This document shows, piece by piece, positions 11,368 through 33,979 of a stretch of DNA of 64,000 nucleotides. The translations under genes and the position numbers were made by a program. This stretch comes from Salpingoeca rosetta (taxonomy: Eukaryota; Protista; Choanoflagellata). The DNA lies in assembly GCA_033442325.1 (NCBI GenBank), contig JAWQFM010000016.1:843155-907154 (forward strand), read 5' to 3'. Every line of letters starts with the position of its first letter. Positions within the stretch are counted from its first letter, which is position 1. The notes beneath the pieces were generated by a model, which saw nothing but the letters and a program-made list of their open reading frames with translations, ran no database searches and was not told the DNA's origin.

Positions 11368-12959
11368 CTACTGCTGCTTTGAAAAAGCAAGAGCAAATTC
11401 AGCGTCGTCCTCCATGTCATCATCATCATCATCATCATCATCACCGTCATCATCGTAATCATCATCGCTGTGGTGATCAAGGCTGCGAACACCGCTCGTC
11501 GCTTCAAATGCGCCCATGCTGCCAAACGCCCCACCCACACGCGCATACGAAGAAGTAACTGCCCAGTCATCCTCGCCAGCGCCAATGTTGCTGTCATCAG
11601 TCTCATCCTCCTCGTAATCGTCAAGAGCGAGCTCCTCCAGCGGGTCAATGTCCGGGTAGTCGGAGTAGTCACCGTCTTCGTCGTCCAACGCATACTTGAG
11701 GGCTGCATCCTTCTTGTCGCCGCTGCCGCTGCCAGCACCTTCACGCCCTCTCGCTCGCGCTTCAAACGTCTTGACAAACGCTTGCCGCTCCTCGTTGAGC
11801 TCTGCAACGCTGCCCCACACCTTGTTCGGGCCATCACGAGCAGTGGCCGTCTGCATGGCTGCGGGAATGGCGCCGAGCCAGGCCTTCCTTGCCTCCGCCG
11901 CTGCAGCACTGCTGGCGCGGAACATGCCTTCGGGCACGTCCAGGTTGTGCAGGTCATCCTTGCCAAGGCACGGGCTGGCGGTGTAGATGATGCGATACAG
12001 GCTCTTCACTGCGGTTTCGGCGCTCATTGTGGTCTCGGTAAGCCGCAAGGGGCCGCACCGCAGGAGCAGGCGTACGGCAACCCGCGCGCAATGGAGGCCC
12101 CCACCGTCACGGCGGCTGCGGCTGCTGTCGTCGTCGTTGTTGTTGTTGTTGTCGTTGTTGTTTGCGCTGCTTCCGCTGACGGTGCCATTGCTGCTGTCAG
12201 AGTCAAACAGCAGTTCAGGCACGCGCTTCCTCAGCAGTTGTCGCTCGCTCGCCGCGACTGCCGGTGTCATTTGCGACAGTCGCATCTCCAGGAGCATCTG
12301 CACGTGCAGCACGCGCATTAGGGCCAGTCGGGCCAGCCGCCTGTGGTGCCCCTGCTCCTGGCGCTGCTTGAGGATGTCTTGCACCTCCTTCAACTCCGCT
12401 TCGGCGTCATCCTTTGTCCACGTATCCTTCTTGACTCCAACCTTGTCCAAGATGGGTTTCTGTGCCATCACCAGCTCACCCATCGCAGTGCGCGCGTTCA
12501 GCACTTGCTTCACCGACTTGTACGCGTCAGAGCCTGAACGGAAGCGACCAGAGTGCAACAGCTTTTTCAGTTCCTCCTGCGACATCTTGCTTGCGCGGAC
12601 GCCGTTTTTCCGCAGCTTTCGGATGGCATCCTCCTCCTGTCGCCACAAGGGCGTGAAGCGCTGAAACAGCTGGTGCAGTACAATCCTCCGCTGCCTCGTG
12701 CGCTCAACGAGCCCTTCCTCAAACAAGTTGTGGCCGACAATGGCCTGCCACACCTTGTCGTGAGCAAGTGCCACTGCGCCGCCGCCATCGAGAACACCCG
12801 GGCACGTGCTCATGGATGGCGACAGGTCTGGCCCAGCCGCACTCTCATGTGGAGGCTGCTCACTCGCCCCGGCGCCGTTGTTGTTGGCCTTACTGGTGTC
12901 GGAGTTGCTGGCCAACTGCTTCGTGGTGTCCTTGCTCTTGCTATTGCTCTTGCTCTTCT

Positions 12960-12991
<32 letters not shown>

Positions 12992-15900
12992 TTCTTGCTC
13001 TTCTTCTTGCCGGCGCTCTGCTCAGGGTCTTCGGTGCGGGTGCTGGCGGAGTCCCGCCCATTGCCATCGCAACCAACAATGAGACTGTTCCACTTTGTTG
13101 GGAAGGGCAAGCTAAACATGTGACCGGCATACTCCAGAATGGCTGCGATCGTGAGGTCGCTGCAGAGCTTGCCTGCTTGCGTCTCGGCCCCGTTCACCTC
13201 CTTGCCCTTGCTGTTATCGTTCTCCTCGTTCTTCTTGTTCTCCTTCTTGTCCTTCTTCTTCTTGTCCTGGTCACCACTACCGGCCGAATTCGTGCTGTTG
13301 TTGTCATGTACTGCTCCTTCTCGCTTGCCGTTGCTTGCATTAACTTCTGCCGGCTCGCCATCACCCACGCGGCCGTTAGCTACATCCACCAACTCCTTTG
13401 GGGTCATGCCGCTTGTGCCGGGCGGTGTCAGTGCGGAGGCGCCATCGCGCAGAAGATCAACCAGCGCAAACAGTGCACTTCGCAGGGACCTGCGTGCCCG
13501 TGCCAGCTTCTCGTGCGCCTGCTTTTGCTGCTGTTGCCACTTCTGCAGTTGGTCTTCAGCCTGTGGAATTTGCATTTCAATATCTTGCTTGTCCTCGTGC
13601 AAGCGGTCGATGATGGTCTGCAAGTCCTCGTCTGTTGGCCTCATGTCGTCATCACCATCATCATCGTCGTCACCACCGCTTTCAGCGTTGCTAGCAGCGG
13701 CAGCGGCGTGTTCCTCATCCCCTTGGTCATATTGAGATGGAGAGTAATCCTCGTCGTCATCGCTCCTGTCATCGTCATCGTCGACGAAATCTGCCTCGTA
13801 GCCGTTGTCATCACTCTCTCCATCGCTAATGCTTTCATGCAGCCTGTCCTCAGCACCTTCAACGACGCCATCGTAGCTATCAACATCATCGGCATCAATG
13901 CCGTTGTCATCGTAGTTGTCATCAGTGCCGGCACCATCCTCGTTCTCATCCTGTTCATCATCCTCATCATCTTCGTCGTCGTCATCATCCTCATCAAGCA
14001 CGTCCTCATCGTCGTCATCGGTCGACACTGCACCATCCCTCTGCACCATGTTCAATAGCTCTTGGTGGCCATCGTCACACACCTCTGCCTCCTCCTCTTC
14101 CTCATCATCTTCCTCCTCTTCCTCTTCTTCTTCGTCCTCATCATCATCTTCTTCTTCGTCCTCATCATCGTCATCGCTGCTGTCGTTTGCGCCCGTGTCA
14201 TACGACCCAGCAGAGTAGTTCCCATCTTCGCCTTCGTATTCTTCTTCGTCTTCGTATTCTTCTTCCTGCTCGAAGGTGTTGTGCCCGTACAGATGAGCCT
14301 CCAAGTCAATGCGTTCTTTCTGGAGCTGTAGATGGCGCTCAAGCATGGCAGCAAGCGTGTTCGTCAAATCGTCCACGACCTGGTCGCAGGTGAATGCATC
14401 GGCCTTTGCGCGCACCACCGCCAGCTGCGCCTGCGTCACGCGCACGTGTGCTTCCTGCATGCACAGGTGGGTGCCAGAGCACGTCACGCTGGTAGTCGTG
14501 CCTGCTTGAGGCAGTGCCGACGGCGATTCGGCGCTTGAAGTTGATGCAGTGAGCAAAGATGACGATGATGACACCGACGACGACGCTGTCGAGGAGGAAG
14601 AGGGTGCACTCCTCGCTGAGGAGCTAGAGGCGGTGCTCCCTCGCACGGTCGCAGGCAGGCTCATGCCCGTGTCACTGGTCCGCCGTTCCTGCAGCTGACT
14701 CTTGAGATCCTCGAGTGTGGACTCGCAAGCACCAATGGCGTTGCTGTCCAAGTGCTCCAGGTGAAGTTTCGCCGCACACACGGTACACACGGGGTCGTGA
14801 AAGCGCTTTCCCGTGTCACCATCGCCCTCTGTGTCGCCACCGCGATCGTGCGCTGCCTGTGGCGGCTCGTTCATGTGGCAGTGCGTCTGGTAAACGCCCT
14901 CGCACTCGTCACACTCGAGGAACACGGGCTCACAGCACAGCATGCGTTTGTGCTGCTTTTGATCGTGGCAGCGCAGCTTGCATGCGTGACCACAGGGCAG
15001 CGGGCGCGGGCACTCCTGCGAGCAGCCACCGTGGTTGTGCGGCTCAATTGTTCTCTCAGACAGCAGCGGTGTCTCCAGCTCGCACGGGCCGTGGTGTTCA
15101 TGTTGCGGACACACAATGGGAAGGCCAGCACAGACAGCCTCCTCAGGCAGGGTGCCAAAGAACTTCTTCCAGAGCCAGCGGCCTTTCTTGACGTTGCAGC
15201 GGTCAAACGTAGACTTGTTGCCCACGACGATCATGCCATCACGCGCACGAGACAGCATCACGTTCACGCGCTCGGGCTCACGCAAGAAGCCGATGCTGCC
15301 CTTGTTGTTGCTGCGCACGAGGGAAATCACCACAATCTTTGCCTCCTCGCCCTGGAAATTGTCGACCGTCACGACCTTGATGGGGAACTCGCGGCGCGCC
15401 GCCTGCAGCAGCGCCACATTGCGTTTGATCACGGCCTTTTCGCGCTTGTCTTCACCATCCTCATCACCGTCGCCGTCAGCACCGTTGTCGTTGCTGTTGG
15501 TGGCGCCGCCATCAGCACTAAGCTCACGACCGACGCTCGCTGATGATGGCGTCGCTGTTGTTGCATGCCTAGTGCCATGGATACCACCCGACGTGCCGTC
15601 GCGGCTGCTGGTGGAGTTGTTGTTGCGGTTGTCGCCGTCGTCGTCATCGTCATGGCCGTCGCCGAGGGAGAAGTCACGCCGGCGCCAGGCCTGTTGCGGG
15701 TCCTCAAACCGCCGACGCCACCGGTCCTGCTTGTGGCTGTGCAGGTGGCTGGCAAGCTCGTGTGAGTCTGCCCTGCACGCCATGCACTCGAGGTGGAGGT
15801 GCTGCTTGGCCTCCGTGGTGATGCTGCGCAGCATGCCGTCCAACAGGCGCGCCTGGCCGCCATATGGGGTGAGCACAACAATGTCGCTGCTCTTGTAGCC

Positions 15901-16646
15901 TTGCAGGAGCAAGTGCTGCACCACCTGAAATACGATGCGCGCCTCCCCCAGGTTGTGGCGGGAGCGCGTGGTGCTGTCTCTGAAGCCCTCCTTCTCGTCG
16001 TGGTTGAGGAAGACGACGTTGTGCCGCAGGCCGACGATGTCTTTGCGCTTCTTCGTCTGCTTGTGGTCCTGCAGGTCAGGATAGGTCATCTCGCGCACGA
16101 GGCGGCTGATGGCGGGGCGCATGCGGTGCTGCTCGTGCAGGGAGGCAAAGCCGAGGACAGGCACAAGGCGCTCGAACAGCGACACGTTGAGGTTGAAGCC
16201 CTCGCCACTCTCCCGCTCGAACTTGTAGCGGTTGACCTTTGGGCGCAGCTGCTTGTGGTCGCCGATGAGGATGGCGTGCTGGCACTTTGTGGGCACGGAC
16301 GCAAGCACGTGCGCCTCCAGGATTTCGCCGGCTTCCTCCGCCATGTACACGGGGATGTCCAGGCCCTTGAGCACGTCGGCGTGGCCGGCAGCACCAGTCG
16401 TTGTGCAGCCAATGATGTCTGCATCCGCCAAGATGGTGCGGTCCTTGGCGGCCCGCAGCTTGCCCAGTTGCTCGTCAGCATCAGCAATAGCCCTGCGAAG
16501 GTCGACGACGAGCTCCGGGATGCGCTCATTCCAATTGAGGGCGGTCAGCTTGCGTGTATCCAGCGGGTACTTCCACAACTTGTTGTTGGCCAAGCCCTGT
16601 GGTGGCGGGGCTCCTGTGCACCACAGCCCCCACAATGACTCGGCCT

Positions 16647-16741
<95 letters not shown>

Positions 16742-19212
16742 GCACTTGCAGACTTGGCCTTGGTTGCTGGTTTGTGCTTGTGCTTGTGCTTGTGCTGGGT
16801 GCCTGGGTCGCTGCTGCTGTTTGACCGGAGAGGCGGGAATCCAAAGGCAGCACGCTCTTCCGGGCTGCCCCTGTAGCCAAGATAGCACTGAGCAGCTGCC
16901 TCGCTGTGCCGCTCAAAGCAAATGGCGCGGCGCAGGGCGCAGATGTGGTTGCGCAAGCGTGTCTTCTGTTTCCGCAGCCTACCCTCCTCCTTCCGCTGAG
17001 CAGGCTTGAGGGCGTGTGAGTCACTGCCCTCGCGCAAGTTGCGCAGCTGATACTGCTCAAGACGAGGGTGCCTGCATCTGCTGCCCAGGCGCACGATCTT
17101 CTTGGTAACGGCGAGCTGCTTGTGGCGCGTTGCCTCCCGACGACGCCCAGCTGTGCCTTGCTGGTCGCTGCTGCCGCTTGTATCACTGTCAGCGCCGTCA
17201 CTGCCGTCACCGCCGTCCCCATCGTCACCATCGTCGTCGCCGATCTCATCACCGAGGAGCTCGGAGAGGAACTGGTCCAGCGCGTGGTTGGTGAAGCAGA
17301 CGACGAGCACCTTGAGCTTGAGCACCTGCACAAGGAAGCGTGTGATGACCACGCCAATGTGCGTCTTGCCTGTGCCTGGTGGGCCCTGGATCAGCGCCAG
17401 GCGGTTGCGCATGACGTGGACCATCGCGGCGCGCTGGCTGGCGTTCAGCTCTGCACCGCCATCGCGGCTGCGCAGGAACTGGGCAAGCTGTGCATCGTGC
17501 TGCCCACGCTTCATGTACTCTGGAGGGCCGACGACTGTGCGGCGGTGGCGCCGTGCCTGCCGCTTCCTGTTTGCTGGGGCCGGCTGCCACCCGCCGCCAT
17601 CATCACCATCATCACCATCATCAACGTCATCAACGTCATCAACGTGGCTGTTGGTATGACGGGAGTTGTTGCTGCTGGGTGCGGTGTTGCTGGCACTGGA
17701 ACTGGCGTCAGTGGTGCTCGTGCCATTGTGGTGGCCAACATTGATGAGGTCTCGCTCCTTCAGCTTGTAGTTGGTGTTCTTGCGCACTTCCTCCTCAAAG
17801 GGGAAGTCGCTCATTTCCTGCAGCTGCCGCAGCGGCTTGTCATATGCGAACAAAGGGGACAGCTGAAGCAAGGTGTACGATCGGTTCTGTTCTTGCTGCG
17901 CGGGCTGCTTCTTGAGGACGTGGGTAATGCTCCCGCACTCGTGGTGGACCAGGTCCCTGACAATCTCGTCGGCCACTGCGTCATCGAGGAGGGTGAGATG
18001 AACCTTGCCTTTCATCAGCATGCCGATGTCACGTATGCGGTCGATGCGGGCAAGGTGCTTCGGCACGCCGTTCTCAAGCAACACGACAAGCCAGTCTGCC
18101 ATGAGCACGCGCTCGCGCTGCCAGAAGCGGATGCGGGAGGTATTGTTGAGCTTGTGGTACGCACTGTCGCGCCCAAGCTCAAAGGTGAAGGTGATGGCGC
18201 GGCCGTTGAGCAGCAGGTCAAACTCGCAGGGGCGCACGTTGTAAACCGGAAGATAGCGGGACTGCGTCAGGCCGAACACCGCGTCGCTGTCGTCGCTGTT
18301 GCCGCTGCGCAGGAGGCCGATGTTGTCTTCGCGCAGAAGACGGAAGTGGTGCTCGAGCAGCTGCTCCATGTTGGCATTGCCTTCCAGCGGGAAGAGGTGC
18401 TCGCCAGGGGCCAACGATCGTTGCAGGACCTCAATCTTGGGGACGATGGGCAGTGTTCGAAATGATGTACCCTCAAAGAGAGCCAGAAAGGCTTGAACGT
18501 CGCTGTTGCTGGACCGGCACTTGCGAACGGCAGGCGATTGCCGAAACCTGTGCATCGACGACAGGATGGATCGGGAAAGCAAGCCCTGAGTGGTCGTGCA
18601 CACGATGCGGAACAGCTTGGCGATTGCGGTGATGTGCTCCGCGTGCGACTGGCCCGGGTGTGGGGTCTCAATCTCGAACAACACTGCCTTCAGCGCCCTG
18701 GAGTCGGAGGCCATGGCACGGAGGGCGGCGTTGCGTTGCCGCTCAAACTCCTTCGCTTCGATGACCAGCAGGCGGTTGATCGCGTTCACCCAGCGATCGG
18801 GGGTGAAATCATTGGCGTCAGAAGCCCTGGGAAGGATATCGTTGAGGGGTTTGGACAGATTCAGGAGCCTAACAAGCTCGCTGTCAGAGGAGCGGCGAAA
18901 GTCAGCGAGAGCGAGCAGAAAGACGCGCTTCTTGGAAGGGCTGGCCTTCTTCTTGCTGTGGGCGATGCCCTCAAAAGCTCTTCGATAGCGCTCAAAACCA
19001 GGGTCTTGCTGTTGCTGTTGCTGCTGCCGCTGGTCGCGGTGGCGGTTTTGCTGGCGTCGCCGGCTGGACGATGAGGATGCATGAGACGATGTCGTTGAGG
19101 AGCGAGAGGAGGTGGAGGATGACGAAGAAGATCGTGCGGCTGATGCTGCCGCGCGTCGTGGCGCTCGAAGGCGTGGCCGTGGTCGTTGTTGTTGCTGCGG
19201 AGACGCTGACAT
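11368..19212 (-). CDS. ZNFX1: ZNFX1-like Upf1-family (SF1B) RNA helicase with NFX1-type zinc finger, intronless, about 2614 aa
   Basis: Single 7.8-kb ORF; likely start at 19212 (MSASPQQQ). Motifs: LEHHFRLLRED, LIQGPPGTGKT, VVCFTNHALDQFL, IIGCTTTGAA, EEAGEILEAHVL, LIGDHKQLRPKV, LNVSLFERL, QHRMRPAIS, VLTPYGGQ, TVDNFQGEE, NVMLSRA, then GGCSQECPRPLPCGHACKLRCH. Confidence 0.92.
16647..16740 (-). repeat. (AACAGC)n hexamer repeat encoding an (NS)n tract inside the ZNFX1 helicase insertion
   Basis: About 15 perfect copies of ttgctg on the + strand, in frame. Confidence 0.9.
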
Positions 19213-19215
19213 GGC

Positions 19216-19305
<90 letters not shown>

Positions 19306-19545
19306 TTGAAATACAGGGAAATGAACACGAGAGAACGAGAACAGCAGGGTGAAGGACAGGTTGAGTATGTGTGTGTGTGTGTGTGTGTGCGTGTTGCGGA
19401 GCTGACTGTCCATCAGGTCCATCGATCTCGAAACAACAACAAGTCTGTCAACAACAGAAGAACAGAGGAGGGTCGGAGCGTCTCACACTCACACTGACTG
19501 GCTTGGTTGGTTGTGTGGAGAGGAGGAGAAAAAGACACTTACAAA

Positions 19546-25839: not shown

Positions 25840-27293
25840 GTTGGTGTTTGGCTGCTGTGTTTTCTGACACAGAAAGCGATTCGGATCGCTTCGGAGGAGA
25901 GTAGAGGCACACGCTTGTCAGGGAGATGGTTCAGCGAGAAAGCCTCTTGAGGCTGCTTCTCAGGATGATTTGGAGGCCGGATGTTGCCCTTGCTGCCTGT
26001 GCATGGCTTGGGTGTTGGATGATGATGATGGCGGAAAATGACCGCTGTGCTGTATGTGCGTTTGTTGAGACCAACAACGCACAAGCTGTGTCACATCAAT
26101 TTACTCTGCCTTGCTTGTACTTGCATGTCAGATGTCTCTGTGACTGTACACCAAAATACAAGGTGAGGCAGCAGAGATGCCGCTGGCCTTTCCCATGACA
26201 GAGCCCACTTCGTGGATCGATGCCCAGCCAGAGTCCCCCCTCCGACTCTCAATGCTGTTGTGGATGCCGACCAGCATCTCAACGCGCGCTTGTTGTGCTG
26301 CTGCTGATGTGTTGGTTTGTATTACATTACATTGCAACTATCGTTACATACTGTTGCTGTGGTTGTGCAGTGTCATATTCGAAGCAGCACAACACAAACA
26401 GATGTCTGTCCAAGACCGAGGTCATCTCGTCCCTTCATACACACCATGTGAGCTTGGTCAAATCATGCAAAGGTTTTTTTTTGTTCTTTGTTCTCCAACA
26501 TCGCGCTCAAGAACACAGAAAGTCGCACACACTGCAGACTGCAAGCAAGTGTCATGTTGCCGTGGTTCCACGCTCACACACAACACAACAACATGGACGC
26601 ACTTCCTCAAACCGAAGCAATCGCGTCCACGGCAACAAAATTAGCTTGCTCATGCAAAGGTTTGTGTGTCTTTGTTGTCGTGACCTGGTAGGTTCAATGC
26701 CACACAAGCCCAGGGTCATAGTTTCATCCCACAGCACAACAAGCTCGCGTTGATACCTGCATTTACGCTGGATCACCCCACGATGAAGGACCGGGACACA
26801 AATGCCAACAGTGCCCCACACCCGAACCTACCACAACCTTCGCCATTTCAACTGATTGGTGCTGGCAACTTTTTCTGGAAGCCCCCACCAAAAATGGCGT
26901 GAGGGATGTTCCTCCATACAGTGGTCGTGTCGTGTGCTGCTTAAAATTATCCACTGTGCTGGTTGTTTTGCCATGCTCGTGTGCTTGCTGTTTTGTGACT
27001 ACTGCTATGTTGCGCTTGGCTGCTGGCTTGTTTTGTCTCTTGCTCTCTTGCTGAATTGGTTGCCGTGTCGGGCAGTGCAGTGGGTGGCTTGAATCTCGAC
27101 CTTCGTCTGCTGCCTTGGCTTTTCCACCCAGAGTTGTTCATTTTCTGTCAACTCCACTGAGCAGGCAAGCAGGCAAGAACCGCAACTCCACGCAAGGAAA
27201 GCGAACAATCAAGGTTTTCACTCAATACGAAGGACACACCAAGGCGAGGCGTCCCTGCACTCATCGTCTCAGGGACTTCAAGCGCAAACAACG

Positions 27294-30200
27294 ATGGCAA
27301 GAAGGACAAGCTCAAGCGCCAGGGCCTGCGACTGCTTCATTTCACTGCGCTTCAATGAAGCCATCAACGCGGGAAAGGCGCTGCAGGCTGCTCTCTCTGA
27401 GCGAGGCGTGACAGCCTTCCTGTGCGAGGTCCCGCCAGGCAGAGACATCGAAAGCACCATCGTGGAGGCCCTGTCAACCTGCAGGATGGCCGTCATCATG
27501 GGGACCAAAACGTATGGGAAGAAGACACCAGCCTCGTTTGGCACAAGAGAAGAGTTGAGGTTCATCATCGACGAGAAGAAGCCATTCTTCTACATCAAAA
27601 TGTGCGCCAAGCTCAAGTCAACTACCGCACGGTTTCGCCTCCCAGATACCATCTCCTACCATATGTGGCAGCCCGACAACAATGATCCCAACATTATTGT
27701 GCCAGCCGATCTCGTCGACGGGATTGTGAAGAGCCTCACGGTTAGTCCTGCTATGTGAGTGTGAGGAGAGCGAGGATGGAGCATGACGTGCAGTGCAAAA
27801 GGTGGGGCAACTTGAAGGAGCAGTGGGGACTGGTCATTCGTGCCTCCCTGCAGTGCTTGTTTGTCGCAATCCCAAGCCAGGCTAACAGAACCGTGATTTC
27901 TGCAATGCATGCCCCTTGCCCTTGTTGCTTCCGCTTGAACCCTCACCTCCTCCTCCAGGATTTGCCCGCCGCAGGCGTGTACAATGACATTGACGATGTC
28001 TTGTCTCCTTTACCTGACCACGCCTTCAACTTTCCACAACCAGAGTCGCAAGTGACACACCATGCTGCTTCCGTAATTTCCTCCTCATGCCCAGACCTCA
28101 CAAAGGACACGGCTTTGGTGGAGAAGAACAGCTCAGTGTCTGGCGTGCCCACAAGCGGCCACATGGCCTCATCCAAGACCTCCGGCCATGGCTCTGGCCC
28201 AGAATCGCCCGCGCACACACCTCCTATCTCGGAAGGCGTGGATGGTCAAACTGCAACTTCACACGGGACGCAAGGCACGTCCTCGCAAGCGCCGTCATCC
28301 TCACTGGCTGTCGCCTCGCCTCCAAACGCTCGCCTCTCACAGGAGCAGAGAAGCCAGACACTGTGTGATATGACATCGTCATCCAAGAACACGACTTCAA
28401 CCACCTCGCCGGTGAGCAACCATGTCGTGACGAAAAGTTCTCGGTGTGCTTGTGACCTCTCCAGAAGTGAACAGTTGGTTGTTCACACCGATGGACCTCA
28501 TCCGTTGCTTGATACCTGGCTGCTCTGGGCACTGTTAGAAGTATCTTCATCCATCATTATCATATCGTCTTGCTACTCAACTCCTGCTTTGTCCCATTTG
28601 CACATACTCATGCCTCACCACCGAAACGTGCATCAACGAGCCACTCACACGCACTCACTCGCACACACACACACATAAGGCTCTGCGACGTAGATTACCG
28701 GCTGTTTCAGAAAGTGCGCCGATATTGCCTCCTTTACTCAGACGGCATACCATTGCCACAAGCTTAAGCAAAAATACAAGCTTTTCCTGCTGTCTCCCAC
28801 CTCTCATGAAAAAGCGACCTGTTGAGCATGCTCGTGATGGCACCTGGGCCCAATGGCAACAGAAGCATGGCCGGCTTCACCACCGGCTGATGTATCTGAC
28901 TCCTGACGCCATCTTTCACGTGAATGTCATCAAACAAGAGGAGAAGGCTTTTGTCTTAAAGCCACTCAGCAAACTTGCGGTACACGACGAAGGCGCCAAA
29001 CTGGTCGTCAAGAACAGCAGCGGCGATACACTTCGCATTTACGCACCCGACACGCCCGAAGGCGGATCCCATTTACAGCAATGGAGGGCGGCACTATTCG
29101 CTGCCAAAAGATGGAACGGCAATGACGACATAGTTCTGCCAGCCTCAATCAAGGCAAACCACCAGTTTGCGGCCGCAATATGGAACCTCATTTTCCCCGG
29201 GACAGCGAGGGCACAGCACCCAGAGTATCGAGACGTTTGGTTGCGCTGGCTGTGTAACCCAAATGCGCAGGCGACGTTCGAGACAATGCATCGCTTGTTC
29301 ATGCGAGCTGTGAGGCAGGTAAACGACGACGCCGCGGCGCTGTCGTACTTGAATCACCTCACAGATCTTCACCACAGCGTGCACACCCGTATGATCATGA
29401 ATGCAATTGACCCCAGCTCCAACATGCTTACCTCTTGGAAGGAGCATACGATGCCCGACAGCAAGGCAACCCACAAGCACATTTTTTTCTCGCTCTTCAC
29501 GGCGTATGTCAGCAAGCAAGCGAGGTTCGCGCAGCAGCATGACAAAACGGGTGCTTGGCCGGGCTTGCTCTGCGCAGCTTTGGACTACCATCCCAGCGTT
29601 CTCCTTGACAGCTCAACAGGGCCTTCCGAGCAAGCTTTCACCGGGCCAACGATCGCGGCAGCTCAAGAAGGCAAACCAGATGATGGCGTCGGTTGTGGTG
29701 CTGGCGCTCACCACGCCGCTGAGCTGCCAGGGGAGCACCAGCACTCTCCGTTTGACGCAAACACCACAGCGGCCATGCAAGCTGAGGAAGAGAGGCTGTC
29801 ACGCCCTCAAGGGGAAGTGTGCAGCGTGCCCCTCACTTGTTTCGAGGAGCTCGTGTATTTCTTCAACGTGGATCACCTGCGGTACTACGCCTGCAAGCAT
29901 TGGGCGCAGCATGATGTCAGTCGCTACCTCTCTCTCTTGGAGACGCAGAACGCCGGTGTTCTCAAGCACGTGTTTGATGGACCAACACTGCAAGGCAGAC
30001 CAGCGGAGCGACTGTGCTTGTTGCTGCCATGCCTCGATATCCGCTCACAGGAGGACCAAGCTGCCATCGTTGAGGCGTTCACCGAGGACGGCGGTCTGCA
30101 CATGGGCACGTTTCGTGTGTTCGCTGAGGCGTGCGTGGCCAAAGCAAAGACAGATCTCCTCGCATTCTCCCTGCGAACGTTCTTCAGCACCCATGCCGCC

Positions 30201-33200
30201 TCCATTCCCGACGCTGTGAGTGAAGTGCTGACCATGCTCACGGAGCCGCAGGAGTCTGGCCATCGACACACCACAGCCAAGGCCTTTGACACGGCTAAGG
30301 TCCTTTTTGATGCGGTGGTCGTCCTGGTGGGTGGTAACCTCGTGTGCGTGGACTCCTTTGAGGACTGGAGCAGCACAAGCACTGATGAACGGAAACAATT
30401 CCTGGTCCACCTCATTCACAACTATGCTTCATCAACCCTTTGCAAAATCACCATCGAAAACCGCGGCTGGCTCGATGACTCGAACATGACGGAGCGAGCG
30501 GCATTGCGTGCCCGTGTTGAAGATGAGACTGTGGCTGTGGATTTTACATATGAGCGTTCAGAGGCGGAGTTTGCGTCACTTCTTGCAGGTTTTGTGCGCA
30601 TCTGCATACATTTGGGCTGCTTCCAAGAGCTCCGCGTCTGGGCGAACAAGATTGGGCAACGGCTGTTCAAACTGAGCTTTGGCGAAGGCTTGCGAGGCGT
30701 GACCATGGAGGCGCTGTCAAGGTCGTTTGACCTTATGCCTGAGTGCAAGGACATGGTGCTCAATGGCACGCTGCTGAGCACACCACAGTTCTTCTGCCAT
30801 GATGCTTTTAACGCGATGATCCGCGACAAGGCGACCGGCGTGGACAAGCTTCGTGGCACGTACTTTGATCTGCTGGCGTTGGCCGAGAAGCTGGACGGGT
30901 ACCCCACCTTTGCCGAGGACATGAAGCACCTGGCATCTCGACTGCTGCCGCACAAGTCCAAGACCATTCTCGACAACCTGAACCACCTGTGTGAAGTTGT
31001 GCTGCAACGAATGAAGCAGGGTGGTAACGTGAGCGGCAATGGAGCAGGTGCCAAAGGAAACAGTCAATCTGCGGCTCTTCAGGAGAGGCGCGCGGCCGGT
31101 CTCAAGCTTGGCGACCTGGTGCAGTGCAGCCTGTATGCCACGGACGCCATCTTCATTGTGCAGTCGTTCCGCAGCCGCAACCTTCTTGAAGGGTGCATTG
31201 CGCACTACGTCAACAATTGTGAACCAAGCACGTGGGTGGAGCTGTTCCGGCGCCTCGACGTCATCGCGTTCTTCATCAAGTATCTGGTGCGCGAGAGCTA
31301 CGAGAAGGCCTTCACGGCGTTCAAGAGCCACAACGGCGGAAACGAATGGGCTTCCCGGCTGGTGGATGCTGCACAGGAGCAGTTTGACGAGCCCATCATC
31401 AGCCTCGACGAGCTGCGTGTTGAAGAGGAAGAAGCGCAAGCACGGTTGATCCAGACCATTCTCGCGCGGGGCACAACCACTGCCGATCCTGAGATGTCAT
31501 TCATCATCGAGTTTACTGGGCGCTGGATGCAGCGCATGAAGGACATTGTGTCGATTCCCATGACGCCGCACAACACGCAGATCATCACCACGCTCATGTT
31601 TGCGGCATTCTACCGCTTGTCCGTGGCTCAGTCGACAAGCAATCTTGGCTCTGAAGCGTCAGGGCTGAAGTCATTGATTGCGGAGGTGGGCACCGGCGAG
31701 GGAAAGTCGGTCATCATCATCATGATGGCGCTGTACTTTGTGTGCGTCCAAGACAGACGTGTGCACATCCTGGAGAACAACGTGAGTCTGCTTGACCGCG
31801 ACTACAGCAACTACAAGGCGTTCTTTTCCCAGTTCAAGAAGTCTGATGGCACCAGCGTCACAGTGAGCACATCCATTGCACAGGAGGCTGACATTACGTA
31901 CTGCTTGCAAGAGGATGTTGAGGCACAACACCGAAGTGAGGCCCCGAAAGGGTGCAACGCGTTCCGCAACGTCGTGCTCATTGTGGATGAGGTGGATGAC
32001 CTGGTGATTGATCAAAACCCCGTCAGCGGCTTTGTCAAACGCGACGAGGACAACAGCGCACACATCCTCAAGTGCTTCCAAGCACTGAAGCGCAGCGGGC
32101 TCGCTGCAGCCAAACCAACTGGGTGCCCCGAGCGCGTTTGGAACAAGGCTCAAGCGGCCTTCCGAACCGCCCAGACCTGGCGCGAGGGAAAAGACTACGC
32201 GCTGGTGGATGGGCGACACCGAATCCTGGATGGGCGTGGTCGCCCAACCCACTACACGAGCGCAACGCTCCAGTACGTCAACTTTATTGCCGGTTACAAC
32301 GACAGCCCGAGCTTTGACACAGTGTTTTACGTGGTCAGCACGCCGCACGTGTTCAAGCAGTACGCGCTCATCTTGGGGCTCACTGGCTCTGTGGGCGGTG
32401 AGGCGGAGCGCGAGTATCTGCGGACCACGTACGATGCGGGCGTGTTCAGCGTGCCGCCGTTCCTGGACACGTGCACCGATGCGTGCAAGCAGGAGCCGCA
32501 GCAGCGGTTCGTGAAGGTAGTGGCCAGTGCGCAGCAGCAGAGATCGGAGGTGATCGAGACGGCCGAAGGCAGCGCAGATTCGGTGCCGGTGCTTGTGATT
32601 ACGCCGAACCCCAAAGAAGCAGCAGCAGTGTCAAATCAGCTGAAGGGACGCCTGGGCCAGGGGCGCGTGCAGCTGCTGCTGGAAGTTGCCAATGGAGTGT
32701 CCCAGAAGGACAAGTGGCAAACCATCATCGACCAAGCGACGCAACCTGCGCAGCAGTCTGGAACCTGCAGTGGGCCGACTGCTGGGTGGCGTGTGACGGT
32801 GACCGACTACTTTGGCGGCCGCGGGCACGATTACAAGGTGACAGACGAAGGCGTGGATGACGCCGGTGGGCTGCTGGTCATCATCACACACATCCCAGAC
32901 TCTTACCGCGAGTGGGTTCAATGGAAGGGCCGCACGGCACGGCAGGACCGCAACGGTCAGCTGGCGCTCATCCTCAACAGCGAGGAGGAGTTCATGAGGG
33001 GGCAGCGCCAGACCGTCACGCAATTCACCAATGGTGAAATTGACAGAGATGAGTTTGTGCGGCAGTTGTTGCGTGAGCGGAATGTGCAGATGAAAACGCA
33101 GCTTGACAAGTACGCCGACCAACAGCGGAGCGGAATGGCTGTGAACGAGATGTGCGATCGCTTCTACCGCAAGTACGGCACGGGAGCCGTGTGGCCAGCC

Positions 33201-33317
33201 AACGACACACAACGCAAGCTGCGCGACTTTTTGAAGACGTATGGCCATACTCCACCAATCAGCAAGACCAAAGAGTTTGCCAATGAGCTGGACATTGGAG
33301 ACGACTTTCCTTACTGA
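27294..33317 (+). CDS. TIR domain + PH-like domain + helical region + SecA-like SF2 ATPase (about 1845 aa, 3 exons)
   Basis: Exons 27294-27740, 27959-28411 and 28680-33317; all junctions are phase 0 (acg|gttagt, ccag|gat, ccg|gtgagc, taag|gct). TIR: DCFISLRF..GVTAFL..IVEALSTCRMAVIMGTKTYG..TREELRF. PH-like: RLMYLTPDAIF..LRIYAP..LQQWRAAL. SecA-like: AEVGTGEGKS, LLDRDY, IVDEVDDLVID, GLTGS, PVLV, GGRGHDY, GGLLVI, WVQWKGRTARQ. Confidence 0.85.
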
Positions 33318-33380: not shown

Positions 33381-33423
<43 letters not shown>

Positions 33424-33979
33424 CAGTTGCAATGGACGCTCTTTGCTTTTCGTTTGATGTGTGTGTGTGATGTGACACGATATGACAGCAGCTTGCCGTT
33501 TCTGTCTTCTTTCCCGTTCTCTTCTCTCTCTCTCTCGTTCAAGTGAGGGAGGTTCTTGAGTGCTGTTTTCCTTCGTCTCGTTGTCATTGTTGTTGTGCTT
33601 GTCCACGTGCACCCGCCCTGTCTTTCATCTGTCTGCGTGTATGTGTGCATTTCTTTGTTTCCCGTTCTGTGCTTGTCTCCTAGTGTTTGGTTTCCTTGCT
33701 CGCTTGACTTTGAGCTGACCGCTTGGCTTGTTGGTGCAAGCAAGTGTACTCATTGCGTTCAAGGAGCAGGGTTCTCTGTCTGTTCTTGCTTTTGTTCGTT
33801 TTGTTTTGCTTGCTTGTTTTTGTTTGCCACAAACAACATTCGCCACGAACCAACAAGCAGCAAAACAGAAGCAAAGAGCGAAGCAACCACCAAAGATCGA
33901 AAACCAAACAAAGCAACAAGCAACACAACACAACCACCACCACCACCACCACCACCACATCCATCCGATCCAGCCGACC

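What the first reader, a model, noticed from the sequence alone, without database searches (positions are those of the whole stretch)
27294..33317. TIR-PH-SecA-like ATPase fusion: a possible NLR-analogous receptor built on a translocase motor
Seen: three ORFs listed separately in the track join through phase-0 GT-AG junctions into one protein of about 1845 aa. The TIR retains a Glu in the catalytic-helix position (TREEL, about 27552). The SecA-like unit retains GTGEGKS, DEVD and QxxGRxARQ but appears to lack the full preprotein-binding and wing domains. Known: canonical SecA is bacterial or plastid, and this organism would have no SecY partner for a cytosolic copy. Inference: an ATP-gated, membrane-targeted (PH) TIR NADase or signalling switch, an architecture I do not recognise as characterised.
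Basis: partly seen in the sequence, partly recalled or inferred. Interest (0 to 1): 0.88.

Follow-up and report, generated by a model that had tools for sequence, protein, structure and literature searches.

The report
TIR–PH-like–SecA-like ATPase gene, choanoflagellate
A gene of the choanoflagellate Salpingoeca rosetta most likely joins a TIR domain of the immune NAD-cleaving type to a cut-down copy of the bacterial SecA motor, a combination found in no searched paper and a candidate innate-immune sensor in a close relative of animals; its expression and function remain untested.

Summary
The window is Salpingoeca rosetta. The three ORFs are the exons of the annotated hypothetical gene PTSG_06287 (1800 aa).

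**Gene model.** That acceptor cuts a motif conserved in relatives, so it is the least likely of three in-frame options. No RNA read confirmed any junction.

**Domains.**
- **TIR:** confirmed. The AlphaFold model has pLDDT 93, and all 50 listed PDB matches are TIRs. The subfamily's invariant Glu87 aligns with Roq1 Glu86, which I recall to be its catalytic Glu.
- **SecA-like ATPase:** confirmed. The family profile hits only SecA in the PDB (E 5e-27), with Z 24. All ATPase motifs are intact. The preprotein-binding insert is reduced, and the wing domain and zinc tail are absent.
- **PH-like fold:** probable (hhalign 80%). Membrane targeting is untested.

**Family context.** The gene belongs to an apparently undescribed protist family of SecA-derived ATPases. 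Members carry swapped accessory domains: SH2, WWE-PARP, VWA, MORN, RRM. Among the relatives retrieved, only the two S. rosetta paralogs carry a TIR.

**Reading.** The same TIR subtype heads S. rosetta LRR-Roc-COR proteins. An ATP-driven sensor controlling a TIR NADase is the best reading but is inferred. RIG-I is a closer analogy than an NLR.

The parts
27294..27740 (+). Exon 1: TIR domain (aa 1-149). The invariant Glu87 is codon 27552-27554. The ATG has A at -3 and G at +4.
   Evidence: The AlphaFold model has pLDDT 92.9. All 50 listed Foldseek PDB matches are TIR domains. In the subfamily alignment Glu87 is invariant and aligns with Roq1 Glu86. GC3 is 0.72.
27741..27958 (+). Intron 1 (218 nt), GTTAGT...CCAG, phase 0.
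   Evidence: Read directly from the sequence. It is the same as in annotation P0001. The paralog has an intron directly after its TIR domain too. No RNA read spans it.
27959..28411 (+). Exon 2: Ser/Thr/Pro-rich linker (151 aa), probably disordered.
   Evidence: It is in frame with exon 1 and is part of P0001. It has no Pfam match. GC3 is 0.60. The paralog has a Pro-rich linker exon at the same place.
28412..28679 (+). The true 3' end is unsettled. Alternatives are 28814 (the annotation) or a 28444-28741 intron.
   Evidence: All in-frame donor/acceptor pairs were enumerated. The motif FSCCLPPLMKK (from 28782) is conserved in P0002 and P0003, which argues against the annotated acceptor at 28815. 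GC3 of 28680-28814 is only 0.40.
28782..29120 (+). PH-like domain (about aa 290-402 in P0001 numbering), with the Trp (W390) invariant among five relatives in its C-terminal helix.
   Evidence: hhalign of the 5-sequence profile against 20 S. rosetta Pfam PH domains gives probability 80%, E 1.4e-5. The best ESM Atlas feature hits are PH-clan families at 0.80-0.84. Pfam itself gives no hit.
29121..31076 (+). Middle region (about aa 403-1054). It matches no known family and its fold was not predicted here.
   Evidence: There is no Pfam or Atlas hit. It is shared only with P0002, P0003, P0046 and P0049.
31077..33314 (+). Family-conserved module (aa 1055-1800): a helical N-terminal extension followed by the SecA-like ATPase, which starts at about 31332. 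Motifs: Walker A GTGEGKS 31689-31709, DEVD 31986-31997, GLTGSVGG 32376-32399, GGRGHDY 32814-32834, QWKGRTARQ 32919-32945. The reduced insert at the PPXD position is at about 32046-32315. The long scaffold-like helix is at about 33045-33176.
   Evidence: Pfam SecA_DEAD scores E 6e-10, above the cut-off. The 70-sequence profile hits only SecA chains in the PDB, E 4.7e-27. The AlphaFold model has pLDDT 93.7 and pTM 0.92. The Foldseek top 36 are SecA or SecA2. VIA-align gives Z 24.4-17.6 to SecA against about 15.8 for the next helicases. Coordinates were checked.
33315..33317 (+). Stop codon.

Best explanation
**What is shown.** This is PTSG_06287 of Salpingoeca rosetta, most likely a single gene of three exons encoding a protein of about 1800-1845 aa. 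No signal peptide or clear membrane span was seen, so it is probably cytosolic. Its layout, from the N-terminus:
- a TIR domain that keeps the catalytic-position Glu;
- a disordered Ser/Thr/Pro-rich linker;
- a PH-like domain;
- a region of about 650 aa that matches no known family;
- a C-terminal SecA-derived SF2 ATPase.

The ATPase has every ATPase motif intact. It also has a shrunken insert at the preprotein-binding position and a long scaffold helix. It has no helical wing domain and no zinc tail.

The gene belongs to a protist-wide family of SecA-like ATPases that I did not find described. The family carries interchangeable accessory domains. Its nearest non-paralog relative has an SH2 domain where this protein has a TIR. 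A sister group carries WWE-PARP.

**What is inferred.** The SecA-like motor no longer moves proteins through SecY. It serves instead as an ATP-dependent ligand sensor or conformational switch, possibly clamping a polypeptide as SecA does. That switch would control the clustering of the N-terminal TIR. The TIR would then cleave NAD+ or make a cyclic ADP-ribose signal. The logic resembles RIG-I (signalling domain plus SF2 motor) or SARM1 and plant TIR receptors.
For: **Identity and gene model**
- P0001 is 100% identical to the window and already joins the three exons.
- The paralog PTSG_00915 has the same TIR exon, linker exon and large exon layout.
- The reading frame upstream of the annotated exon 3 encodes a motif conserved in P0002 and P0003. 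It has no in-frame ATG, so the large exon needs an upstream exon.
- The next gene upstream is on the opposite strand.

**TIR**
- The subfamily has 639 clusters, and 50 of the 55 aligned members hit Pfam TIR_2.
- Glu87 is invariant and aligns with Roq1 Glu86.
- The model has pLDDT 92.9, and all 50 listed structural matches are TIRs, including RPP1, RUN1 and SARM1.
- The same TIR subtype heads S. rosetta LRR-Roc-COR proteins.
- Elsewhere it joins WD40, AIG1, LRR, ARM, Ank and receptor-like ectodomains.

**SecA-like motor**
- Walker A, DEvD, motif III, RGhD and QxxGRTxRQ are invariant in 70 relatives.
- The genome has no SecA_SW or SecA_PP_bind match and one SecY/Sec61-family gene.

**Family**
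- Accessory domains are SH2, WWE-PARP, VWA, MORN, RRM and zf-RanBP.
- Neighbouring genes on relatives' contigs look eukaryotic.
- The family forms one side of a branch, apart from canonical SecA, with SH-aLRT 100.

**Context**
- A different S. rosetta TIR makes cADPR (bioRxiv 10.64898/2026.04.20.719644).
- Choanoflagellates lack NLRs, RIG-I and MDA5 (PMC6040629).
Against: - No transcript evidence was obtained. Three RNA runs gave almost no reads on the gene. The reads on 31100-31700 carry the paralog's letters at all five mismatch sites.
- The 3' end of intron 2 is unresolved.
- This protein's own TIR_2 score is below Pfam's cut-off, 20.9 against 28 bits.
- No enzyme activity, ligand, partner or phenotype is known.
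- In the cited preprint only 4 of 29 tested TIRs from unicellular eukaryotes were active in E. coli.
- PADLOC finds no link to known defence systems.
- The nearest relative carries an SH2 domain instead of a TIR. That fits ordinary signalling as well as it fits immunity.
Confidence: 0.45

Rival explanations
1. The protein is real and fused, but its TIR is a non-enzymatic interaction module. The protein would be a scaffold or motor in ordinary phosphotyrosine or lipid signalling, not an immune NADase.
For: The closest non-paralog relative P0003 carries an SH2 domain at the same N-terminal position. A PH-like domain follows. Animal TIRs often act as adaptors. Most Glu-bearing eukaryotic TIRs tested in E. 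coli showed no product.
Against: Glu87 is invariant across 55 diverse members of a widely shuffled subfamily, and mean identity is high at 48%. That pattern suits an active site better than a docking surface. Sister family members carry PARP, another NAD+-using domain.
Confidence: 0.2
2. There are two separate genes: a small stand-alone TIR protein (154 aa, 27294-27758) and a PH-like/SecA-like protein that starts downstream. The fusion would be an annotation artefact.
For: No RNA read spans either junction. The TIR ORF has its own stop five codons after the proposed donor. Exon 2 has weaker codon bias, GC3 0.60, and contains in-frame Met codons. Many short stand-alone members of this TIR subfamily exist.
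Against: The paralog keeps the same order and the same first-intron position after long divergence; its TIR is 36% identical. Intron 1 has good GT-AG signals in phase 0. The conserved FSCCLPP motif lies upstream of the only candidate Met of the large exon. The family habitually carries an N-terminal signalling domain, shown on a single transcript in P0003.
Confidence: 0.15
3. The SecA-like unit is still a polypeptide translocase or unfoldase. It would work at an endomembrane or in unconventional secretion, positioned by the PH-like domain, with the TIR as a regulatory add-on.
For: The whole SecA core is kept: both RecA domains, an insert at the PPXD site and the scaffold helix. It aligns over 470-567 residues with SecA, including SecY-bound forms. 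Aravind-lab surveys mention SecA-like ATPase or helicase-related domains in giant actinobacterial toxins, where they are predicted to aid secretion, and among Amoebophilus effector domains (PMC8195603, PMC3482391).
Against: The wing domain and zinc tail are absent and the PPXD-site insert is reduced. The protein scores far below every SecA model cut-off, 61 against 862 bits. Only one SecY/Sec61-family gene exists. It is presumably the ER Sec61, which is not known to use SecA (my own knowledge).
Confidence: 0.12
4. The gene is a silent or decaying duplicate with no current function.
For: There were almost no RNA reads in three runs, while the paralog was detectable.
Against: The 4.6-kb exon is open, with all catalytic motifs and GC3 of 0.70. 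Only about a quarter of each run was read, and only one study was sampled.
Confidence: 0.05

Closest known systems
Bacterial SecA / SecA2 preprotein translocase ATPase
   Same: It has the tandem RecA-like DEAD motor with SecA-specific motifs, an insert at the PPXD position and a long scaffold helix. It is the only family hit by the profile in the PDB (E 4.7e-27). VIA-align gives Z up to 24.4 over about 475-567 residues.
   Different: Identity is 17-23%. The insert is about 90 aa instead of 120-155. It has no helical wing domain, no SEC-C zinc tail and about 1250 extra N-terminal residues. It scores far below the equivalog cut-offs. It is a eukaryotic gene with spliceosomal-type introns, in an organism without plastids (from my own knowledge).
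Bacterial 'secondary SecA_DEAD domain proteins' (PMC4452313)
   Same: These are also SecA_DEAD proteins that lack all or most of SecA_SW and whose role in Sec transport is unproven.
   Different: They are bacterial, are linked to type I secretion genes, and have no TIR, PH or other signalling domains. Their relationship to the eukaryotic family was not tested here.
RIG-I-like receptors (CARD-CARD-SF2 helicase-CTD)
   Same: They have an N-terminal signalling or effector domain tethered to an SF2 ATPase that senses a polymer and changes shape. RIG-I and MDA5 are among the best non-SecA structural matches, at Z about 15.5-15.8.
   Different: The effector here is a TIR, not a CARD. The motor is SecA-type, not a DExD/H RNA helicase with Hel2i and a CTD. 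The ligand is unknown. The resemblance is functional analogy only.
SARM1 and plant TIR-NLRs (TIR NADases held by a regulatory module)
   Same: The TIR has a Glu at the catalytic position. SARM1, RUN1 and RPP1 are among the top structural matches. The TIR is fused to a large regulatory module.
   Different: The regulator is neither ARM-SAM nor a STAND NB-ARC with LRRs. The ATPase is C-terminal and of SF2 type.
S. rosetta TIR-LRR-Roc-COR proteins (PTSG_07288, PTSG_12575, PTSG_12838)
   Same: They carry the same TIR subfamily at the N-terminus, 49-53% identical, followed by an NTPase module.
   Different: Their NTPase is a Roc GTPase with LRRs, not a SecA-like ATPase.

Membership tests
TIR domain | Flavodoxin-like alpha/beta TIR fold | tested here: met
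   The AlphaFold model has pLDDT 92.9. All 50 listed Foldseek PDB matches are TIR domains, at probability 1.00 and TM about 0.6-0.68.
TIR domain | Significant match to TIR sequence profiles | tested here: met
   This protein alone scores TIR_2 E 5e-4, 20.9 bits, below the 28-bit cut-off. At the subfamily level, 50 of 55 members match TIR_2, best E 1.1e-9. The subfamily profile's best PDB hits are Roq1, SARM1, RPV1 and RUN1.
TIR domain (NADase class) | Catalytic Glu at the start of helix alpha-C | tested here: met
   Glu87 is invariant in 55 sequences. It aligns with Roq1 Glu86 and lies in helix 84-93 of the model. That Roq1 Glu86 is the catalytic residue comes from my own knowledge of the literature.
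TIR domain (NADase class) | NAD+ cleavage or cyclic ADPR production | not testable with these tools
   This needs an enzyme assay of aa 1-150, wild type against Glu87Ala.
SecA translocase | Two RecA-like DEAD motor domains with SecA-type motifs | tested here: met
   SecA_DEAD scores E 6e-10, above the cut-off. The profile hits only SecA in the PDB. The motifs are invariant.
SecA translocase | Preprotein cross-linking domain (PPXD, Pfam SecA_PP_bind) | tested here: inconclusive
   There is no SecA_PP_bind hit. An insert of about 90 aa sits at the same site, and its DYALVDGRHRILD strand pair aligns with SecA DYVVEDGQVVIVD.
SecA translocase | Helical scaffold plus helical wing domain (Pfam SecA_SW) | tested here: not met
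   There is no SecA_SW hit in the protein or anywhere in the genome. The model keeps one 44-residue helix and two short helices, only about 90 residues after the second RecA domain.
SecA translocase | C-terminal zinc-binding SEC-C tail | tested here: not met
   No SEC-C match appears in the Pfam scan. The protein ends 90 residues after the motor.
SecA translocase | Score above curated SecA/SecA2 model cut-offs | tested here: not met
   The best NCBIfam SecA model scores 61.5 bits against a cut-off of 862.
SecA translocase | A bacterial-type SecYEG channel partner | tested here: inconclusive
   The genome has one SecY/Sec61-family gene. That it is the ER Sec61 alpha subunit is my inference and was not tested.
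PH domain | Match to a PH-clan profile | tested here: inconclusive
   Pfam gives no hit even at E 10. hhalign against 20 S. rosetta PH domains gives probability 80%, E 1.4e-5. The Atlas feature hits are PH clan at 0.80-0.84, which the tool rates as a lead only.
PH domain | C-terminal helix with the conserved Trp | tested here: met
   W390 is invariant in five relatives, and the tract QQWRAALFAA aligns with the PH consensus helix.
PH domain | Phosphoinositide or membrane binding | not testable with these tools
   Most PH-like folds do not bind lipids (my own knowledge). This needs lipid-binding and localisation assays.
NLR / STAND receptor | Central STAND P-loop NTPase (NB-ARC or NACHT) | tested here: not met
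   The only NTPase is a C-terminal SF2 SecA-type motor.
NLR / STAND receptor | C-terminal repeat sensor (LRR, WD40, TPR) | tested here: not met
   No repeat family was found by Pfam in the whole protein.

The most novel reading that the evidence does not exclude
The protist-wide SecA-derived ATPases are an unrecognised class of cytosolic innate-immune or conflict sensors. A former protein-translocation motor would now clamp a foreign or aberrant polymer and switch on NAD+-using effectors. The effector is a TIR in S. rosetta and WWE-PARP in the sister group. Since choanoflagellates lack NLRs and RIG-I-like receptors, this would be one of their own solutions to cytosolic sensing.
Probability: 0.25. 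Interest if true: 0.85.

Novelty: new variant of a known kind. Interest (0 to 1): 0.6.

Why it matters
[quoted passage not shown] They have TLR-like proteins, SARM1, cGAS and STING, but no NLRs or RIG-I-like receptors (PMC6040629).

A TIR with an intact catalytic-position Glu is here tethered to an intact ATPase motor. The same TIR subtype sits on Roc-COR GTPases in the same genome. Together these point to lineage-specific 'TIR plus NTPase' sensors that could be tested in S. rosetta, which I recall (not checked here) to be genetically tractable.

It would also be a clear case of the SecA motor being re-used outside protein export. It exposes a large eukaryotic SecA-like family, with PARP, SH2, VWA and other partners, that the searched literature does not describe.

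Tried and rejected
**Transcript evidence**
- Laying three RNA runs on 26700-32699 gave no junction and almost no reads. The reads at 95-99% identity carry the paralog's bases.
- A second run search with intron 1, exon 2 and intron 2 found only holders with all the words, that is DNA.
- The look-up of encoding contigs for P0001 returned only the genome record.

**PH-like domain and middle region**
- The Pfam scan of the PH-like region gave no PH hit.
- The Atlas feature search of residues 300-1200 gave nothing usable.
- The homolog search of residues 300-1050 found only the paralog.
- Pfam on the N-terminal parts of nine relatives found nothing.

**Other database searches**
- PADLOC gave no hit.

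**Literature**
- Searches for TIR with SecA with choanoflagellate, SecA_DEAD, SecA-like and the gene identifiers found no description of this architecture.
- F2UCH1 and F2TXV3 were not found in the held (truncated) supplements of the 2026 TIR preprint.

**Readings rejected**
- My first guess was an intron-less kinetoplastid, because of the CA repeats and long ORFs. I dropped it once the window was identified as S. rosetta.
- NLR/STAND membership, because the ATPase is of SF2 type.
- A canonical SecA orthologue, for the reasons in the membership test.

Full report
**Identity and observation**

The window is from the choanoflagellate Salpingoeca rosetta. The large ORF is 100% identical to the annotated hypothetical protein PTSG_06287 (P0001, XP_004993178.1, UniProt F2UCH1, 1800 aa). 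The genome handle is 55.4 Mb.

Both proposed junctions are phase-0 GT-AG pairs:
- G|GTTAGT...CTCCTCCAG|G at 27740/27959;
- CCG|GTGAGC...ACATAAG|G at 28411/28680.

Joining them gives 1845 codons with no internal stop. The motif coordinates were verified: Glu87 is codon 27552-27554, GTGEGKS is 31689-31709, DEVD is 31986-31997 and QWKGRTARQ is 32919-32945.

**Gene model**

The public annotation already joins the three exons.

The annotated acceptor is the least likely of the options. The frame just upstream encodes FSCCLPPLMKK, which matches AFQCCLPPAMRK in the paralog PTSG_00915 and FPTQLPSLM in relative P0003. There is no in-frame ATG upstream of that motif. The large exon therefore needs an upstream exon.

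The exact acceptor remains open for two reasons:
- GC3 of 28680-28814 is only 0.40, against 0.70-0.72 in exons 1 and 3.
- A third in-frame pair also keeps the motif. Its donor is 28444 (TCG|GTGTGC) and its acceptor 28741 (TTTACTCAG|A), which is the most pyrimidine-rich acceptor of the three.

These options differ only within the linker.

The paralog (L006) has the same layout: a TIR exon, a Pro-rich linker exon and then the PH-like exon, with the first intron directly after the TIR. The next upstream gene lies on the opposite strand.

**No RNA support**

Direct RNA support could not be obtained. Three RNA-seq runs gave 8-34 reads on 6 kb and no junctions. The reads at 31100-31700 carry the paralog's base at all five mismatch sites, so they come from PTSG_00915. 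A second run search found only DNA-like holders.

I put the fusion at about 0.8.

**TIR domain**

Alone, the 150-aa N-terminus scores below Pfam's TIR_2 cut-off (E 5e-4, 20.9 bits). An exhaustive search found 639 clusters of close relatives. In an alignment of 55 of them:
- 50 match TIR_2, with a best E of 1.1e-9;
- Glu87, the second Glu of TREEL, is invariant;
- the profile's best PDB hits are Roq1, SARM1, RPV1 and RUN1;
- Glu87 aligns with Roq1 Glu86, which I recall to be its catalytic residue.

The AlphaFold model has pLDDT 92.9. All 50 listed Foldseek PDB matches are TIR domains. Glu87 lies in the helix at 84-93.

This TIR subtype is a mobile module:
- In S. rosetta it also heads three LRR-Roc-COR proteins.
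- Elsewhere it joins WD40, AIG1, PDZ, LRR, ARM and Ank domains, and a receptor-like NHL/LamG/ephrin-receptor ectodomain.

**SecA-like ATPase**

Sequence evidence:
- Pfam SecA_DEAD is above its cut-off at E 6e-10.
- The conserved module of the family spans P0001 residues about 1055-1800.
- In 70 relatives, Walker A TGEGKS, DEvD, GLTGSvGG, RGhD and Q..GRT.R.D.G are invariant.
- The profile hits only SecA chains in the PDB, at E 4.7e-27, covering B. subtilis SecA 96-617.

Structural evidence:
- The AlphaFold model of residues 1050-1800 has pLDDT 93.7 and pTM 0.92.
- The Foldseek top 36 matches are all SecA or SecA2, at E 1e-23 to 6e-13. The next match is XPD at 5e-9.
- VIA-align gives Z 24.4-17.6 over 470-567 residues, mapping model 85-745 onto E. 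coli SecA 12-815. RIG-I, Dbp5, CasDinG and MDA5 follow at about 15.8.

What is kept and what is lost:
- A stem-and-insert of about 90 aa remains at the PPXD site, including the strand pair DYALVDGRHRILD, which aligns with SecA DYVVEDGQVVIVD.
- A 44-residue scaffold-like helix remains, but only about 90 residues follow the second RecA domain.
- Pfam SecA_PP_bind, SecA_SW and SEC-C do not match.
- The best NCBIfam SecA model reaches 61 bits against a cut-off of 862.
- The genome has no SecA_SW or SecA_PP_bind match and one SecY/Sec61-family gene.

The unit is therefore SecA-derived but is not a SecA orthologue.

**PH-like domain and middle region**

Pfam is silent on 28770-29120. Three lines still point to a PH-like fold:
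- The five-sequence profile aligns to 20 bona fide S. rosetta PH domains with hhalign probability 80%, E 1.4e-5. HHRLMYL matches WKxRWFxL, and the invariant Trp lies in the last helix.
- The language-model neighbours are PH-clan families at 0.80-0.84, which the tool rates as a lead only.

I rate a PH-like fold at about 0.8. Lipid or membrane binding is not shown.

Residues about 403-1054 have no detectable family and are shared only with the closest relatives. A hydropathy scan found one stretch above threshold, starting at residues 793-797, which I did not take for a membrane span.

**Family context**

The SecA-like module occurs in hundreds of proteins from protist transcriptomes and metagenomes. 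On their contigs the neighbours are eukaryote-type genes such as Josephin, EF-hand and patatin.

Accessory domains differ between members:
- N-terminal: SH2 (P0003), RRM, zf-RanBP.
- C-terminal: WWE-PARP, VWA, MORN.

Among the 120 relatives retrieved, only the two S. rosetta paralogs carry the TIR.

I built a quick IQ-TREE of 80 motor domains. Every second family row was left out, and the tree is unrooted. It places the family on one side of a long branch (SH-aLRT 100), apart from canonical SecA and from a second 'fish/giant' SecA-like type. Within the family the order is:
- P0001 and P0002 are sisters.
- P0003 (SH2) and P0049 come next, then P0009.
- The PARP-bearing forms are the neighbouring clade.

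**Mechanism**

Shown:
- the domain make-up;
- intact ATPase and TIR catalytic residues;
- loss of the translocase-specific parts;
- modular swapping of signalling or effector domains on a conserved motor.

Inferred:
- The motor acts as an ATP-dependent sensor or switch, perhaps still clamping a polypeptide.
- That switch governs TIR self-association and NAD+ cleavage or cADPR-type signalling.

The closest analogy is RIG-I-like receptors, or SARM1 and plant TIR receptors. It is not an NLR, because the ATPase is an SF2 type and C-terminal, and no repeat sensor is present.

Three observations fit an immune or conflict role but do not prove one:
- A different S. rosetta TIR produces cADPR.
- Choanoflagellates lack NLRs and RIG-I/MDA5.
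- PARP, another NAD+-using domain, is the partner in the sister clade.

The SH2 variant and the lack of any expression or activity data keep the scaffold reading alive.

**Novelty**

No searched paper mentions the gene or a TIR-SecA architecture. The nearest published concepts are:
- bacterial 'secondary SecA_DEAD domain proteins' that lack SecA_SW (PMC4452313);
- passing mentions of SecA-like domains in bacterial toxins and effectors.

The gene model itself is public, and UniProt names it a SecA-profile protein. I class this as a new variant of a known kind: a TIR effector coupled to an NTPase, with an unprecedented SecA-derived motor.

This scan also noted the same stretch within a larger 'conflict locus' (s1-433371), and a giant SecA-like fusion elsewhere in the genome (s1-434347).

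Noticed in passing
window 11368-19422 (-): An uninterrupted 2684-aa ORF carries AAA_11 and AAA_12 (UPF1/SEN1/ZNFX1-type SF1 helicase) domains, about 8 kb from the TIR gene. I only ran Pfam on it.
   Followed up: partly
G000:C15 about 1281946-1290007 (L008, L011); also C15 about 565000 (L012) and C31 about 429200 (L013): S. rosetta has a second, more distant SecA-like family: three open frames of about 2690 aa. Pfam on the C15 copy (L011) found SecA_DEAD, P-loop_SecA and Helicase_C. The other two were found by the SecA_DEAD genome search only. In the tree the C15 copy falls outside the TIR gene's family. It sits with canonical SecA and the fish 'uncharacterized LOC' proteins, but on a very long branch, so its exact place is unsure.
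   Followed up: partly
P0192 (1427 aa, metagenomic relative of the TIR subfamily): This protein combines NHL/teneurin, LamG and ephrin-receptor-like domains and PT repeats with the same TIR subtype at the C-terminus. It looks like a receptor with an ectodomain and a cytoplasmic TIR, a TLR-like layout built from different parts.
   Followed up: no
P0122 (S. rosetta, 1299 aa): The annotated protein joins a TIR-Roc-COR protein to a C-terminal TsaD/Kae1 domain. This may be two neighbouring genes merged by the annotation.
   Followed up: no
L016 10001-18469 (Logan contig of an unnamed protist): Two SecA_DEAD genes of the family (1805 aa and 1002 aa) lie tail to tail. A gene with a patatin domain lies two genes further on.
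   Followed up: no
window 28642-28677 and 33400-33470: These are CA/GT dinucleotide repeats, one inside intron 2 and one just after the stop codon. Stray RNA reads from other loci pile up on the first, so depth there is not expression.
   Followed up: yes
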